Shown: positions 1 through 23,863 of the stretch, in pieces
Layout of the letters: each line of letters begins with the position of its first letter
How positions within the stretch are numbered: the stretch's first letter is position 1
NCBI RefSeq assembly: GCF_000143415.4
Contig: NW_003314383.1
Span: 435,329-459,191 of the forward strand
Direction of reading: 5' to 3'
Origin: Selaginella moellendorffii
Taxonomy: Eukaryota; Plantae; Lycopodiophyta
DNA: 23,863 nt
The notes under the pieces: generated by a model
What the model saw: the letters and a program-made list of their open reading frames with translations, nothing else
The model's database searches: none
What the model was told of the DNA's origin: nothing
Program-made: the position numbers and the translations under genes

Positions 1-1037
1 ACGTTCTACGCCGCTGTATCCTTCCTCACACTGTCATCACTTCATGCCATAATTCACCTTAAGGCCACTTTTCATCTGAGGCAACAATTCGTTTGGTTCT
101 TCAAGCTGGCTATTGGTGGCCAACGCTTCACAAGGATGTTGCTACCTACGTTCAGACCTGTGATCCCTGCCAGGGTGCTGGTCGCCCAACTCACCGCGAT
201 CTGATGCCGCTTAATCCTCTGCTTCTGGTGCTTCCTTTTGAGAAGTGGGGCATCGATTTTGTGGGACCGATCAAGCCGGCCAGTCATCCTTCCTGTTGTC
301 GCTACATTCTCGTTTGCATGGACTACGTCACAAAGTGGGCCGAGGCTGAAGCTCTCACGGAAGATACAGCCAAGGTTGCGACTTTTCTTTACAAGAACAT
401 CATCATGAGATTTGGCTGCCCTTTGGAGCTGGTGAGTGACCGAGATACTCACTTCATCAATCAAGTGATCGAGACCTTGGTGGAGAAGTATGGCATCGCT
501 CATCGCTACCACCCTCGTGCTTGGTGCGCACCAACAAGATATGTGTGACATCATCATGAAGCTCGCAAGTGCTTCTCGCACAGATTGGGATCACCGTTTG
601 CTCGATGCACTCTGGGCATACCACGTTGCTTACAAGGTCACCACCAAAGCTTCACCGTTCCATCTTGTTTATGGACAAGAAGCCATCCTGCCGCTTGAGC
701 TCGAGATTATGGCTGTCGAGCACAACTTGGACTGGGACAACACTCTTCAAGCTCGACTGGACATGCTTCTACAGCTCGACGAGCGTCGACTTCTCGCTTT
801 CCAAGCTCGCGAAGCATGCCGCAATGGTATGATCGTCATTTGCGTGCTAAACATTTTTCTGCTGGTGGTTCTGCTGTATGATAGCAAGCACTGAAAAAAG
901 CATGGGAAACTACGTGTTCACTGGCTTGGGCCATATTGCATTGTTGAAGTTTTTTCTAACGGCTCAGTCCAGCTTGAAGATTTCAGTGGGAACTTCTTAC
1001 CAACTGGTGCTCACTTGCGCAAGTACCATGAGTGAGA
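1..1037 (+). pseudogene. Ty3/gypsy pol C-terminus (integrase), frameshifted and partly deleted; no chromodomain
   Basis: ORF 93-548 has the integrase Zn-finger end (YWWPTLHKDVATYVQTCDPCQ) and core motifs (PFEKWGIDFVGP, LVSDRDTHF). ORF 490-894 continues (WDHRLLDALWAY..YKVTTKASPFHLVYGQE). A GPY/F module GKLRVHWLGPYCIVEVFSNGSVQLED lies at ~905-980. The 5' end runs off the window. Confidence 0.92.
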
Positions 1038-3050: not shown

Positions 3051-3468
3051 CTAGGGCTGGATGTATTTAGGACTTAATATATCTGAGACCGAATTCAAAA
3101 CCGAGTTTAAAATATAGACAAAGATTGAATTCAAGACCAAATATAAATAGGGGTCAACTATAAAGGATAATAGCCCAAGAGTAAGAATGTCCTTTTTTTT
3201 CCAATTAGTTAAATGTTTTGGGATATTTGGAGTTAAATATCATTAATTTTGCATACTATTGGGTTAAATAACCTCTAAAACACTTGAGACCAAGTTTAAG
3301 TTTAAGTTTGAGTACTATTGAGTTAAGTAACCTTTAAGAACATTTCAGACCAAATCCAAGAAACAACTTTACAATCCCTACTATTTCTGTAGATTTCAAT
3401 GTTATTTCCTAACATTATATATTGCATGTGTAATTGCAAGTTTGTCTTGCTTTAAACCCTAGCCCTAG
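3051..3468. repeat. AT-rich degenerate repeat / possible MITE-like relic with an internal ~60 bp direct repeat
   Basis: CTAGGGCT (3051) and AGCCCTAG (3461-3468) are inverted. An imperfect tandem duplication TACTATTG(G/A)GTTAA.TAACCT...AGACCAA occurs at ~3253-3300 and ~3313-3360. No convincing TSD. Confidence 0.3.
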
Positions 3469-4739: not shown

Positions 4740-7700
4740 AATATATATATATATATATAATCGAAGTGACTGAAAATGCTTCGCCTCTGCCATCTTTTGA
4801 GAACCATACGACATAGTAAACAATCTAATGGAGATTTAGATGCCTCTGAAACTATGATTGATCATGATACACATACTATAGCTGTTCAAAATAATCATGA
4901 TAATGATTCTATACACCAAAATATTAATCTTGATAATGACTATATACAGCAATCAGTTGTACACTCAGAAGCATCTGGAACCTTACATGCATGTCATTAT
5001 GACAATTACATATATCAAGCAATATTAAATCCACCACTCCCACCCATGAATACCACACTAGCAAGCCATAGCATTTATAATGACTTTAACATAATAAATT
5101 TTAATATTGGTAGTTTATCATTTGTTTGTACTTTTTGTAATGCATTGCATTTTAAAGATGAAAACTCTTCAATATGTTGCCAGAATAACCAAGTTATATT
5201 ACCTCCAATTTCACCCTTACCATTTGATTTACTTTCACTTTACAAGCAAAATAAGAACTCTAATTTTAAAACAAATATTAGACACTATAATAGTGCTCTT
5301 ACTTTTGCATCTATGTCTTCTAATATTGATATTGTAAAAGGTCATGGTCCTTATCGCTTTAAAATCCATGGTCAAATATATCATAATATTGTTTCAGCAC
5401 ATCCTTCTAAAGGTCAATATCGAACTTATGGACAACTTTATATGCTTGATACTCTAGAAGCTACAAATATAAGAAAGCAAAACCCTTTTAATTCAAGTTG
5501 TGAGACAAACTTACTTAAACATGATGTTCTCCTTCGTCATGTTAACCCATATGCTCAAGCTTTCAAAATGATGTATGAAATGGAACAAGAAGAAATTCAT
5601 TTTGCTACACTTTCAGGTTATCCTATACGTGGTGTTTACATGTTATTAAAAACTGAAGGAACTGATCCACGACGCTATAATGCTCCACGGACAAATGATG
5701 TTGCTGTTGTGTTTGTTAGTGATGATGGAGAACCGCCATATAGTCGTGAAATTTATATATATCCAACTGCAAGCAATTCTAAATGTATCTCAACACTTGA
5801 TTATAATTGTGATCCAATGGTTTACCCATTAATATTTCCTTTTGGTGACAGAGGTTGGCACAAAAATATTTTTAATTCTGGACGTCGAATTACATTGCTC
5901 CAATATTATGCATACCGTTTATCTATAAGAGACACAATACACTTTGGTTTTGATCAAATTTTACATGCAGGAAAACTCACACAACAATATATTGTTGATG
6001 CTTATGTAAAAGTTGAAAGCAATAATTTGAATTACTATCGCACTCATCAAAAACAATTGTGAGTTGAAATGTATACTGGTCTTATGGATTATGTTGCAAA
6101 CCGTGCTACTAATGAAAATATAAATCCGATTGTTATTTTACCTTCAAGTTTTGGGGGTGGCCTTAGAGCAATGCAACAAAATTATCAAGATGCAATAGCT
6201 ATAGTTACCCATTTTTCAAAGCCAGATCTTTTCATTACTTTTACATGCAATCCCAAATGGCCAGAAATTTCTAAAAACTTACATCCAAATGAAAGCCTTG
6301 AGGATCGTCCAGACTTGGTTTCGAGAGTATTTCATATCAAGCTTAAAGAATTTTTGAATGATATTACTAAAAAACATATTTTTGGAAATTGTATTACTTT
6401 TATATATGTAATTGAATTTTAAAAAAGAAGCCTTCCACATTGTCACTTTCTAGGGATTTTATCTCATGAAAACAAGATTAAAAACCGTAATGCTATTGAC
6501 CAATACATAACGGCACAATTGCTTGATCCTCAAAATGAACCTGAAATTTCTAAAATAATTACATCTCATATGATATATAGTCCTTGTAGGCTTCTTTACC
6601 CTAATATTCTTTGTATGGAAAATGGCACTTGCTCAAAAGGTTATCCAAAAAAATTTAATTATGAAACTACTTTTAGTGTTGATGGATATCCAGATTATTA
6701 TAGACCTAATAATGGTCGTACATTTCTAAAAAATGGGTGTTATATTGATAATTGTTGGGTAGTGCCTTATAATAAATACCTTTGTAAAAAATATAATGCT
6801 CATATTAATATTGAAATTTGTGCTACTATAAAAAGTATTAAGTATTTATTTCAATATGTTTATAAAGGTTATGATTGTGCTACAATTGAAATCCATTCAG
6901 CAACCCAACCTGATAATAATTTAAATTGTGATGAAATCTCAACATTTTTAAATACACGTTATGTATCTGCTCCAGAGGCAATATGGAGACTTTTTAAATT
7001 TAAAATGCATGGTCATTCGACCCCTATAATCCGTCTTCCTATCCATCTTCCAAATTTTCAAAACATCTATTTTATAGAAGGTTCTGAACAAATAGCACTT
7101 CAAAGAGCTACTCAAAATCGTACGATGTTGACAAAATGGTTTGAATTAAATATAAATGACCCAAATGCTAGACAATATACATATCCTGAAATTCCTTTAT
7201 ATTATACATTTAACCCTCATATTCATAACTGGCAAATTCGACATACAAGAAATGTCATTCACCGAATGTATTCTGTGTCACCATCTAATGTTGAACTATA
7301 TCATTTACGTTTTATTTTACTCCATAAAAAAGGTGCTACATCTTTCAAAGATCTTAAGACAGTTAATAATATTTATTATGACACATTTCAACAAGTTGCA
7401 AATGCAATGGGGCTTATAGCTGATGATACTGAATGGGAAAAATGTTTAGAAGATGTTTGCTGTTTTTTTAGAATGCCATCACAATTAAGACAATTATTTG
7501 TATTACTTTGTATCTTTTCACTCCAAAAGATCCTTACTGCCTGTGGGATAAATTTAAAGACTTCCTCTCTGAGGATTTCATGCAACTAAATTCAATTTTT
7601 CATTATGAACATGCTTTCCATGATATAAATATTAAAATGAAAATGCATAGCAAAACTAATCAAAACTATCATCTATCTATGCCGTCTGAAAATTTTGATG

Positions 7701-9164
7701 ATGAAAAAATTGTCAACTCAACACAAATATATCAAAATGTTGAACAAAATATTCCTTAATTTAATCAAGAACAGTTAAATATTTTTAATGATATTCTTAA
7801 TGTTATTGATTACCCAATTGAGCATAATTGATACATTTTCATTGATGGTCCTGGTGGTACTGGTAAAACATTTCTTCTTAACACTCTTATAAATATTTTA
7901 CAACTAAAAAAAATAAATGTTATTAGCATGGCTTAGACAGGAATTGCAAGTACTTTACTTTATAATGGCCGAACTTCACATACTACTTTTAAACTTCATG
8001 TTTCAATAAATGAAACATTAACTTCCACTATAACTGCTAATAGTGAAGCAGGTATAAGAATCAAAACTACTAATGTATTGTTATGGGATGAAATAAGTAT
8101 GGTTCACACTCATGCATTCACTACTGTTGATCAAGTGTTGCAAGACCTAAAAAATACATCATTACTTTTTGGTGGCATAATTGTTGTCACTAGCGGGGAC
8201 TTTAGACAAGCACTTCCAGTCATTCCACATGGACATAGGGCACAAATTGTTTTAAGTTTTATAAGAATGAATAAGTTATGGAGATTATTTAGAAAGTTAT
8301 CTTTGAAAACAAATATACGGCTTGCTGAAAGTGATAAATCATGGTCTGAATGGCTTTTCAAAGTTGGAAATGGTGAAAATTTTGAAAATTTACCATCTTT
8401 ACCTTCTAACTCCATTTTATTACCTCATACACAACTAATTTATTCATCAATTATTGATTTTGTCTACCCTTCAATACTTGATATTTCAAACTCTTATATT
8501 GTAGCCAACCGAGTCATACTTACCCCACTTAACGATGATACATTTGCAATCAACAACACTATTATCTCTAGATTACAAGGTGATACATACATCTACAAAA
8601 GCATTGATTTTGTTGACACTGAACATCCTGAAAATTTTCCAATAGAATTCCTAAATTTTATTACACCTTTTGGTCTCTCACCACATAAATTCTCTCTCAA
8701 ACAAGGTGCTATTCTTATCCTCCTAAAAAATATGTCTCCATCAACAGGATTATGCAATGATACATGTCTCATCCTGAAAAATGCACTACCAAATGTTTTA
8801 GATTGTGAAATTGTGATGGGGCAATTTAAAGGGACAAGAGTTTTATCACACTAATACCATCAAATACAGAAATTCCATTCAAAATGTCCAGATGACAATT
8901 TCCAATTCGTTTGGGTTACTGCTTAACAATCTCCAAATGCCAAGGATAGACATTTGACTGAGTTGGAATTTACTTGCCCCACCCAGTTTTCACTCATGGG
9001 CAACTTTATGTGGCTTTATCAAAATGCACATCACCACATGGATTTAGAATTAAAGTTTAAAACACCACACGCCAAGGCCACCTCTTACAATTAACACTGT
9101 CTATAAAGAGGTTTTATATTGAACCTCTTTGTAAACAACCCAGCATTTGCTGGGCAAGTACTCG
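4740..9164 (+). mobile_element. Helitron rolling-circle transposon, ~4.4 kb, now defective
   Basis: It encodes Rep-helicase. The 3' terminal hairpin CCCAGCA-TT-TGCTGGG (9139-9154) is followed by CAAGTA-CTCG|T (end 9164). The 5' end is approximate, near the (AT)n tract at ~4740-4759. Confidence 0.88.
4776..9117 (+). pseudogene. Helitron RepHel (HUH endonuclease + PIF1-family helicase), intronless, disrupted by stops and frameshifts
   Basis: Zn-finger CTFCNALHF..CC. Rep motifs KPDLFITFTCNPKWPEI, VIEF*KRSLPHCH and KYLFQYVYKG. Walker A FIDGPGGTGKTFL (~7838-7876), Walker B LWDEISM, GDFRQALPV, and C-terminal QFPIRLGYCLTISKCQG..VFTHGQLYVALS. Stops at 6060 (TGA), 6420 (TAA), 7757 and ~7934; frameshifts near 7465 and 8850. 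Confidence 0.95.
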
Positions 9165-22750: not shown

Positions 22751-22888
22751 NNNNNNNNNNNNNNNNNNNNNNNNNNNNNNNNNNNNNNNNNNNNNNNNNN
22801 NNNNNNNNNNNNNNNNNNNNNNNNNNNNNNNNNNNNNNNNNNNNNNNNNNNNNNNNNNNNNNNNNNNNNNNNNNNNNNNNNNNNNNNN
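22751..22888. other. Assembly gap
   Basis: Run of N. Confidence 1.
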
Positions 22889-23293
22889 ACTTACTAGCCC
22901 CAAGAATGGCATCCATGCCACTCAACACTTGCACCTGGTCCAAGTGCTCCTCGTGTCCGGTCCCAAGACCGACACCCAAAGGTACCACTGACATCTCGGC
23001 CCGTTACGCTAAGGCCATGCCCATTCACCTTTGCTGCACTAGTGGTCCAATACCACTTGCATCACAATCCCGTCTCTCCAAGACTGGGCCATCCGTCCAC
23101 GAGTCGTCATCCTAGATCCACTCCTTAGCATCCTTAGGCTGCCCATAGATCTGGGGAATTGCCTTCCCCAAAGTCCCTTTGTCAGTTCCCACCAAGTCCC
23201 TTTCTGCCCCTGGCCGTGTTTGCCAACACTGCCACTGGATCGAGGCCCACAGGCCCGACCCCTAAGTCCCAGTGCTCGACCCGAGGGGTAGGG

Positions 23294-23863
23294 TGTCAAG
23301 AGAGCGAGGCTCTCAGGAGAGCTGCGGCTCTCAGCTTCCGTTCACGAGGGCATGAACTTGCAGGGAAGCGTGGTGGATTGTAAACAACCAAAGAGAACGA
23401 CTTGAGAGACGATCCATTGGGGTTCAAATATAGAGGGAAAGGGCCCATGAACAAGAGTGCACCCCTTTTTCCAATCGGTTAAGGGTCTTGGGATATTTGG
23501 GGTTAAGCGTCCTTGGGTTTGAATAGTACTGGGCTGGGTGACCTCCCGGGAAGTCCAAACTCAGGAGCTTACATTTGGTATCAGAGGGGTCTCGGGTCCG
23601 ACTCTGTTGGTTGGCTAAGGGAATCACACCACATGTTGATTGACATCTGGCTGGTCCAGTTTGCTCCCGCTGGGCTCGACCCGAGGGGTAGGGTGTCAAG
23701 AGAGCGGGGCTCTCGGGAGAGCTGCGGCTCTCAGCTTCCGTTCACGAGCGTGAACTTGCAGGGAAGCGTGGTGGATTGTAAGCAACCAAAGGGAACGACT
23801 CAAGAGACGGTCCATGGGGTTCAAATATAGAGGGAAAGGGCCCATGAACAAGAGTGCACCCCC
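23294..23863 (+). mobile_element. Cassandra-like TRIM: LTR1 23294-23573, internal domain 23574-23693, LTR2 from 23694 (runs off the window)
   Basis: LTR1 is TGTCAAG...CTTACA (280 bp). PBS TGGTATCAGAG (tRNA-iMet) at 23576-23586. The internal region is 120 bp and non-coding. PPT GAGGGGTAGGG at 23683-23693. LTR2 is ~94% identical over the visible ~170 bp, and the LTR contains a 5S-like segment. Confidence 0.92.
23501..23556 (+). promoter_or_regulatory. 5S rRNA-derived internal control region (Pol III A-box to C-box) inside the LTR
   Basis: GGTTAAGCGTCCTTGGGTTTGAATAGTACTGGGCTGGGTGACCTCCCGGGAAGTCC aligns with plant 5S AGTTAAGCGTGCTTGGGCGAGAGTAGTACTAGGATGGGTGACCTCCTGGGAAGTCC. Confidence 0.9.

What the first reader, a model, noticed from the sequence alone, without database searches (positions are those of the whole stretch)
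22889..23863. 5S-bearing Cassandra-type LTR shared between a minimal TRIM and a different, longer upstream element: candidate partner or helper
Seen: LTR1 is followed by a PBS, so it acts as the TRIM's 5' LTR. It is also preceded by the same ~20 nt end-of-internal plus PPT block (GCTCGACCCGAGGGGTAGGG, 23274-23293) that precedes LTR2. The ~385 bp further upstream (22889-23273) does not match the 120-bp TRIM internal domain and contains no LTR, so this is not a simple tandem TRIM array. Established: Cassandra TRIMs are non-autonomous, carry 5S sequence in their LTRs and need trans-acting enzymes; to my knowledge no autonomous partner is firmly identified. Inference: LTR1 is the 3' LTR of a longer element with 5S-bearing LTRs, and the TRIM may be its internal-deletion derivative. 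Relatives of the longer element could encode gag-pol.
Basis: partly seen in the sequence, partly recalled or inferred. Interest (0 to 1): 0.8.

Follow-up and report, generated by a model that had tools for sequence, protein, structure and literature searches.

The report
Left-truncated multi-LTR Cassandra retrotransposon remnant
This is a tiny gene-less plant retrotransposon of the 5S-carrying Cassandra type, most likely the wreck of a three-LTR tandem copy whose first spacer was cut off and now abuts an unrelated, very abundant repeat. That is a common kind of decay and not a trace of the long-sought helper element.

Summary
LTR1 (23294-23573, TG..CA) is followed by an initiator-Met PBS and a 120-nt internal domain, then LTR2, which the window end cuts. 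The same 20-nt internal-end plus PPT block precedes both LTRs and occurs nowhere else in the window. LTR1 carries a 5S-like segment (Rfam 34.4 bits, E 4e-5).

The helper reading is not supported:
- 22889-23273 has no coding signal, and no second LTR or PBS lies upstream.
- Public contigs of the same organism show this stretch is a piece of a very abundant repeat. In more than 50 contig variants that repeat runs on past position 23271 with its own conserved sequence, not into the Cassandra PPT and LTR. The join is therefore a breakpoint inside both families, not the natural end of a long internal domain.

Cassandra copies with three or more LTRs, each inner LTR flanked by PPT and PBS, and left-truncated copies are both well documented.

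Best reading: a left-truncated multi-LTR Cassandra.

Not excluded: a reverse-transcription chimera, or a collapse of two loci on this 975-bp contig, which follows a gap.

The scan has already noted Cassandra-type elements and chimeras elsewhere in this genome. Interest is low.

The parts
22751..22888 (.). Assembly gap (138 N). The finding lies on the 975 bases that follow it.
22889..23271 (.). Internal fragment of an unrelated, very abundant, non-coding repeat family. It is C-rich on the + strand (GC skew -0.33). It is truncated at both ends shown here: the family consensus goes on before 22890 and behind 23271.
   Evidence: more than 100 contig variants per run; loose ends at 22890 (agreement 0.8) and at 23271 (52 contigs, agreement 0.85); no coding signal; composition.
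23272..23273 (+). Two bases (GT) at the join, of uncertain origin. Cassandra has GG here. No microhomology between the two parents is visible.
   Evidence: Direct reading
23274..23293 (+). Last 20 nt of a Cassandra internal domain, including the PPT GAGGGGTAGGG (23283-23293). This is all that is left of the upstream unit.
23294..23573 (+). LTR1, 280 nt, TG..CA. It has a T5 run at 23466-23470 and a 5S rRNA-like segment at 23483-23570. The 3' boundary is confirmed because contigs diverge into unrelated flanks behind 23573.
   Evidence: (79 contigs, agreement 0.38 at 23573)
23574..23693 (+). Complete 120-nt internal domain. The PBS TGGTATCAGAGG is at 23576-23587. The second copy of the 20-nt block with the PPT is at 23674-23693.
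23694..23863 (+). LTR2, first 170 nt only, cut by the window end. It is about 94% identical to LTR1.

Best explanation
The locus is the remnant of a multi-LTR (three-LTR or longer tandem) Cassandra-type TRIM.

Shown:
- One complete unit survives: LTR1, PBS, 120-nt internal domain, PPT, LTR2.
- LTR1 was the middle, shared LTR, so it keeps the PPT and the last 20 nt of the preceding internal domain on its 5' side.
- The 20-nt stump abuts an internal fragment of an unrelated, very abundant non-coding repeat.

Inferred:
- The rest of the upstream unit (about 100 nt of internal domain, a PBS and a further LTR) was lost in a DNA-level break. A deletion or illegitimate recombination with end joining in repeat-rich DNA is the likely cause.
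- While intact, the element would have worked like other Cassandras. Transcription would start from the 5S-derived promoter in the LTR. Reverse transcription would be primed by tRNA-iMet at the PBS and by the PPT, using enzymes supplied in trans.

The upstream fragment plays no part in this and is not a helper.
For: - LTR1 is flanked by a PPT block and a PBS. In pear, every inner LTR of a multi-LTR Cassandra has this arrangement, and 15-20% of intact copies there have three LTRs (PMC4079214). Tandem arrays are also reported in ferns and many other plants (PMC7215508; PMC4717578).
- Truncation is the commonest fate. In pear, 52% of Cassandra copies are truncated and 821 are classed 'left side deleted'.
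- The upstream DNA is an abundant repeat with more than 100 contig variants per run. It continues past 23271 in 52 contigs with a conserved non-Cassandra sequence (agreement 0.85), and continues before 22890 as well. The join therefore cuts both families.
- All other high-support loose ends inside 22889-23273 also have high agreement, so no terminus of that family lies in this stretch.
- The repeat left of the gap (22566-22750) is likewise broken against its own consensus at 22565. The neighbourhood is a patchwork of truncated repeats.
- No coding signal, no further LTR and no further PBS lie upstream.
- Composition flips at the join: GC skew is -0.33 upstream and +0.2 in Cassandra.
Against: - The join was not confirmed independently. 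No listed contig bridges 23271-23274 (table 8 shows only the longest pieces).
- The 975-bp stretch follows a gap and probably ends the scaffold.
- The gap hides what lies 5' of the fragment, so a further Cassandra LTR there cannot be excluded.
- The genome could not be sampled for more copies of this join, so 'single-copy breakpoint' is assumed, not shown.
- Earlier notes of this scan report several Cassandra chimeras with other LTR elements in this genome. That raises the prior for an RNA-level origin.
Confidence: 0.55

Rival explanations
1. Assembly artefact. Two different loci were merged through the near-identical Cassandra LTR on a short, low-coverage contig at a scaffold end. One locus would be a repeat fragment followed by the 20-nt block and an LTR. 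The other would be an ordinary two-LTR Cassandra. Alternatively, the join itself comes from a chimeric clone. LTR1 would then not be shared on any real molecule.
For: - The finding sits on 975 bases between a 138-N gap and the window end, and all of it is highly repeated DNA.
- The best public runs hold only 0.45-0.61 of its sampled 31-mers.
- No contig bridging 23271-23274 was listed.
- Among the differences that one search lists (its table is truncated), the window departs from the family majority in the 5' part of LTR1 (23315, 23352, 23384, 23466) but nowhere in 23467-23700. A mosaic would allow this pattern, but the counts are too small to be significant.
Against: - Assemblers join reads through shared sequence. 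The repeat-to-Cassandra join has no shared sequence, so at least one read must carry it.
- An inner LTR flanked by PPT and PBS is a common real structure.
- An X7 contig matches 23627-23800 with no substitutions (2 gaps), so at least the internal-PPT-LTR2 part exists in an independent data set of the organism.
Confidence: 0.2
2. Reverse-transcription chimera. During minus-strand synthesis on a Cassandra RNA, reverse transcriptase copied the LTR, the PPT and 20 nt of internal domain. It then switched to a co-packaged RNA of the abundant repeat. The product integrated as a hybrid element, and LTR1 later gained the downstream unit by LTR-LTR recombination. This would imply that the two families share a particle and therefore a helper.
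For: - The break lies just inside the internal domain, next to an intact PPT and LTR. A template switch would leave the junction in that place (inference).
- Template switching is one proposed origin of Cassandra concatemers (PMC7215508).
- Earlier follow-ups of this scan describe Cassandra joined to other LTR elements at shared PBS sites in this genome (s1-432119, s1-402654, s1-434229). I did not check them here.
- One contig per run (X1-X3, all one sample) joins the same repeat at 23031 to the Cassandra LTR at 23379. This may be a second, different junction between the two families.
- The fragment has no T4 run on the + strand that would stop pol III.
Against: - No microhomology is visible at the switch point.
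- The 22.7 kb upstream shows no Cassandra LTR or PBS that could serve as the 5' end of such a hybrid.
- It is not known that the repeat is a retroelement, nor that its + strand is the sense strand. Its composition is opposite to that of Cassandra.
- Judged by the majority differences that one search lists (a truncated list), the repeat fragment is more diverged from its family (about 20 in 385 nt) than the Cassandra part is from its own (6 in 570 nt). One simultaneous origin does not predict this. The evidence is weak.
- The 23031-23379 joint rests on a 27-nt side.
Confidence: 0.15
3. LTR1 is the 3' LTR of a genuine longer element family with 5S-bearing LTRs. 22889-23273 is the end of its internal domain, and the 680-bp TRIM is its deletion derivative. 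Relatives could encode gag-pol.
For: - The PPT block precedes LTR1.
- The upstream DNA is repetitive, not unique.
- First-stage notes elsewhere in this genome propose 5S-LTR elements next to chromovirus genes. They are unchecked.
Against: - The repeat's other copies run on past 23271 into a conserved sequence that is not a PPT or Cassandra LTR.
- There are no gag, RT or IN signals and no related predicted proteins.
- There is no 5' LTR and no second PBS upstream.
- Similarity to the TRIM internal domain stops abruptly after 20 nt instead of fading.
- The literature held here reports no indication of an autonomous family for Cassandra. It argues that a pol III-driven LTR is unlikely to be shared with an autonomous pol II element (PMC10886601).
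Confidence: 0.07

Closest known systems
Multi-LTR (3L-type) and tandemly arrayed Cassandra elements (pear, barley, ferns; TA-TRIMs in general)
   Same: An inner LTR flanked by a PPT on one side and a PBS on the other. LTRs of about 280 nt with a 5S-derived segment. A short non-coding internal domain. (PMC4079214; PMC7215508; PMC4717578.)
   Different: Only 20 nt of the upstream internal domain survive, and no third LTR is present. The outer ends and the target duplication cannot be seen.
Truncated Cassandra copies ('left side deleted' class of Yin et al. 2014)
   Same: The element is cut on its left side and abuts unrelated DNA. In pear this is the most frequent class of Cassandra copies.
   Different: Here the cut falls in the spacer of a multi-LTR copy and leaves a complete two-LTR unit. 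That arrangement mimics a shared LTR between two different elements.
Chimeric LTR retroelements made by template switching between co-packaged RNAs
   Same: A junction between two repeat families lies close to a priming site (here the PPT).
   Different: There is no evidence here that the hybrid has two LTRs, a target duplication or more than one copy. The reported chimeras of this genome join at the PBS, not at the PPT side.

Membership tests
Cassandra lineage (5S-bearing TRIM) | 5S rRNA-derived segment inside the LTR | tested here: met
   RF00001 match at 23483-23570, 34.4 bits, E 4e-5. LTR2 is cut before this part.
Cassandra lineage (5S-bearing TRIM) | Complete pol III internal promoter (box A, intermediate element, box C) | tested here: inconclusive
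   The score is below the Rfam gathering score (38). Model positions 22-57 are missing, while the 3' part that includes the box C region aligns well. Assigning the boxes rests on general knowledge of 5S genes.
Cassandra lineage (5S-bearing TRIM) | Initiator-Met tRNA PBS just after the 5' LTR | tested here: met
   TGGTATCAGAGG at 23576-23587, 11 of 12 positions, 2 nt after the LTR. A methionine PBS is stated for all Cassandras.
Cassandra lineage (5S-bearing TRIM) | PPT directly before the 3' LTR, and LTR ends TG..CA | tested here: met
   GAGGGGTAGGG abuts TG of both LTRs. LTR1 ends CA. The 3' boundary is confirmed by divergent flanks at 23573.
Cassandra lineage (5S-bearing TRIM) | Under about 1 kb, with no coding capacity | tested here: met
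   A 280-nt LTR, a 120-nt internal domain and an LTR of which 170 nt are seen give about 680 nt if LTR2 is full length. Only short ORFs are present. The published range is 565-860 nt.
Cassandra lineage (5S-bearing TRIM) | 5-bp target site duplication | not testable with these tools
   The 3' end of LTR2 lies beyond the window, and the 5' side is truncated.
Multi-LTR / tandem Cassandra | Inner LTR flanked by a PPT upstream and a PBS downstream | tested here: met
   definition
Multi-LTR / tandem Cassandra | Full upstream internal domain and a further LTR | tested here: not met
   Similarity ends 20 nt upstream of LTR1. There is no other intact LTR in the window. This fits a truncated, not an intact, member.
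   The 138-N gap remains unread.
   No Pfam match at E<=1 for any ORF piece. No word-sharing proteins.
   52 contigs of run X1 continue behind 23271 with a conserved non-Cassandra sequence.

The most novel reading that the evidence does not exclude
The join records a reverse-transcriptase template switch between a Cassandra RNA and the RNA of another very abundant non-coding repeat packaged in the same particle. Together with the PBS-side chimeras noted elsewhere in this genome, it would point to a shared helper and give a handle on who mobilises Cassandra.
Probability: 0.15. Interest if true: 0.55.

Novelty: new member of a known kind. Interest (0 to 1): 0.2.

Why it matters
As it stands it matters little. 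It is one more decayed copy of a known kind of element, and its apparent 'second, longer element' is a breakpoint against an unrelated repeat.

Its value is cautionary. In Cassandra-rich genomes a PPT stump before an LTR is expected from truncated multi-LTR copies. It should not be read as a partner element unless the other end is seen.

If the RNA-level origin were shown, the locus would add to the evidence on which families Cassandra is co-packaged with. The literature held here says its autonomous helper is still unknown (PMC10886601).

Tried and rejected
- Other copies of the upstream repeat in the window: none.
- Coding signal in 22889-23273 and 22644-22748: no Pfam match at E<=1.
- Reaching other genomic copies through proteins: exact look-ups of four window ORFs found nothing on record. 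Word searches with the two longest ORFs of the repeat found no candidates.
- A search with the Helitron ORF returned only relatives at 48% identity or less, and none named from this organism. The genome could therefore not be sampled this way.
- A scan of metagenome contigs for a 22-mer from the deepest bin of the repeat (23197-23259) gave 0 hits.
- Look-ups of earlier findings by sequence and by relatives were blank.
- The idea that the 20-nt block belongs to the LTR was rejected. The LTR would then not start with TG and would have no PPT outside it.
- A clean nested insertion of the repeat into a Cassandra spacer was rejected. The repeat's consensus continues past the join.
- Strand composition as a guide to the repeat's orientation was judged too weak to use.
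- Two papers (PMC7750724, PMC2311327) are not held.

Full report
**What is there.** The last 975 bases of the window follow a 138-N gap (22751-22888). They read as follows:
- 22889-23271: a 383-nt stretch, C-rich on the + strand.
- 23272-23273: two bases, GT.
- 23274-23293: the 20-nt block GCTCGACCCGAGGGGTAGGG.
- 23294-23573: LTR1, 280 nt, TG..CA.
- 23574-23693: a 120-nt internal domain. It starts with TT plus TGGTATCAGAGG and ends with the same 20-nt block.
- 23694-23863: the first 170 nt of LTR2.

The block occurs exactly twice in the window, against 0 expected by chance. The PBS-like site is the only one in the window. LTR1 and LTR2 are about 94% identical, and all 9 substitutions are transitions.

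LTR1 carries a 5S rRNA-like segment at 23483-23570. It scores 34.4 bits, E 4e-5, which is below the Rfam gathering score of 38 because model positions 22-57 are missing. The element fits the Cassandra lineage on every feature that can be seen. Promoter completeness stays open and the target duplication cannot be seen.

**What the upstream 385 nt is.**
- It does not resemble the internal domain or the LTR on either strand, and it has no other copy in the window.
- It has stops in all six frames.
- None of its ORF pieces matches a Pfam family at E<=1.
- Its two longest ORFs share no words with any protein in the large collection.

I laid contigs of four public runs of the same organism on 22000-23863 (runs found, laid). 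The result is informative:
- The stretch is covered by more than 100 different contig variants per run, with summed depths comparable to those of the Cassandra LTR. It is a very abundant repeat, not unique flank.
- 52 contigs of run X1 leave the window behind 23271 and continue with a conserved sequence (agreement 0.85) that is neither a PPT nor a Cassandra LTR.
- 51 contigs leave before 22890, also with a conserved continuation.
- By contrast, contigs leaving behind 23573 go into unrelated flanks (agreement 0.38). This marks a true element end and confirms the LTR boundary.
- All other strongly supported loose ends inside 22889-23273 have high agreement. They look like subfamily indels, not termini.

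The fragment is therefore an internal piece of a larger repeat, cut at the join. Cassandra is also cut there, since 100 of the 120 nt of the preceding spacer are missing. No microhomology is visible at the join. GC skew flips from -0.33 to about +0.2.

**Surroundings.**
- The 185 nt left of the gap (22566-22750) belong to another highly repeated family. It too is broken against its own consensus, at 22565.
- Nothing upstream in the window looks like a 5' Cassandra LTR. The only other trace is an old, AT-rich, 72%-identical LTR fragment near 3115-3276.

**Comparison with what is known.**
[quoted passage not shown] 52% of all copies are truncated, and 821 are classed as left-side deleted (PMC4079214).
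- Tandem arrays of LTR and internal domain are reported for many plants, including ferns. Their proposed origins are LTR-LTR recombination or template switching (PMC7215508).

A PPT stump in front of an LTR that is also followed by a PBS is what a left-truncated multi-LTR copy looks like.

**Explanation and rivals.**
- Best reading (0.55): a multi-LTR Cassandra lost its left part in a DNA-level break and now abuts a fragment of an unrelated abundant repeat.
- Rival, assembly collapse or chimeric clone (0.2). The contig is short, follows a gap and probably ends the scaffold. I could not see a contig bridging 23271-23274, because one search lists only the longest pieces.
- Rival, reverse-transcription template switch (0.15). 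This becomes more plausible because earlier notes of this scan describe Cassandra joined to other LTR elements at PBS sites in this genome (s1-432119, s1-402654, s1-434229; not checked here). One contig per run also joins the same repeat at 23031 to the LTR at 23379.
Its tested predictions failed: a 5' LTR, a PBS, coding remnants and a natural end at the PPT. The gap limits the first two.

The literature held here still knows no autonomous family for Cassandra. It argues that a pol III-type LTR is unlikely to be shared with an autonomous element (PMC10886601).

**Limits.**
- No tool here could search the plant genome itself.
- The junction, the gap content, the end of LTR2 and the copy number of the join remain untested.
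If it is right, the papers I could search describe TRIMs and a tRNA-derived Helenus in that species, but no 5S-bearing element. That point belongs to the whole family in this genome, which the scan has already flagged many times, not to this locus.

**Verdict.** This is an ordinary decayed copy of a known kind, and interest is 0.2.

Noticed in passing
window 3115-3345: An old, AT-rich, heavily decayed Cassandra-type LTR fragment, about 72% identical to LTR1 positions 98-252. A second degenerate copy of the 5S box-C-like part appears to follow it. It sits in a block of 28-36% GC.
   Followed up: partly
window 4776-8854: Helitron ORFs (Helitron_like_N, PIF1 helicase) lie in a block of 26-33% GC, between flanks of about 40-50% GC. 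The best protein relatives are at most 48% identical. All the named ones are from animals (rotifers, frogs, spiders, ants, springtails), a fungus or bacterial metagenome bins; none is from a plant.
   Followed up: partly
window 20500-20926 and 21232-21658: A 427-nt inverted repeat, 92% complementary, with 305 nt between the arms and strongly skewed composition. A 233-aa ORF (21447-22148, minus strand) overlaps the right arm and has no Pfam match.
   Followed up: no
window 22566-22750: A second highly repeated family lies left of the gap. It is broken against its own consensus at 22565. Other copies have a 35-nt duplication variant at 22704/22705.
   Followed up: no
window 23031 joined to 23379 (contigs of runs X1-X3): One contig per run (all one sample) joins the upstream repeat at 23031 to the inside of the Cassandra LTR at 23379, with GG between. 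This may be a second, different junction between the two families elsewhere in the genome. It rests on a 27-nt side.
   Followed up: no
window 93-545: A retroelement integrase fragment (zinc-binding and core domains) at the window start. It is unrelated to the finding by position.
   Followed up: partly
window 17285-17356 (minus strand): A tRNA-Pro (AGG) gene, 56.7 bits.
   Followed up: no
They date Cassandra to the common ancestor of ferns and angiosperms.
   Followed up: partly
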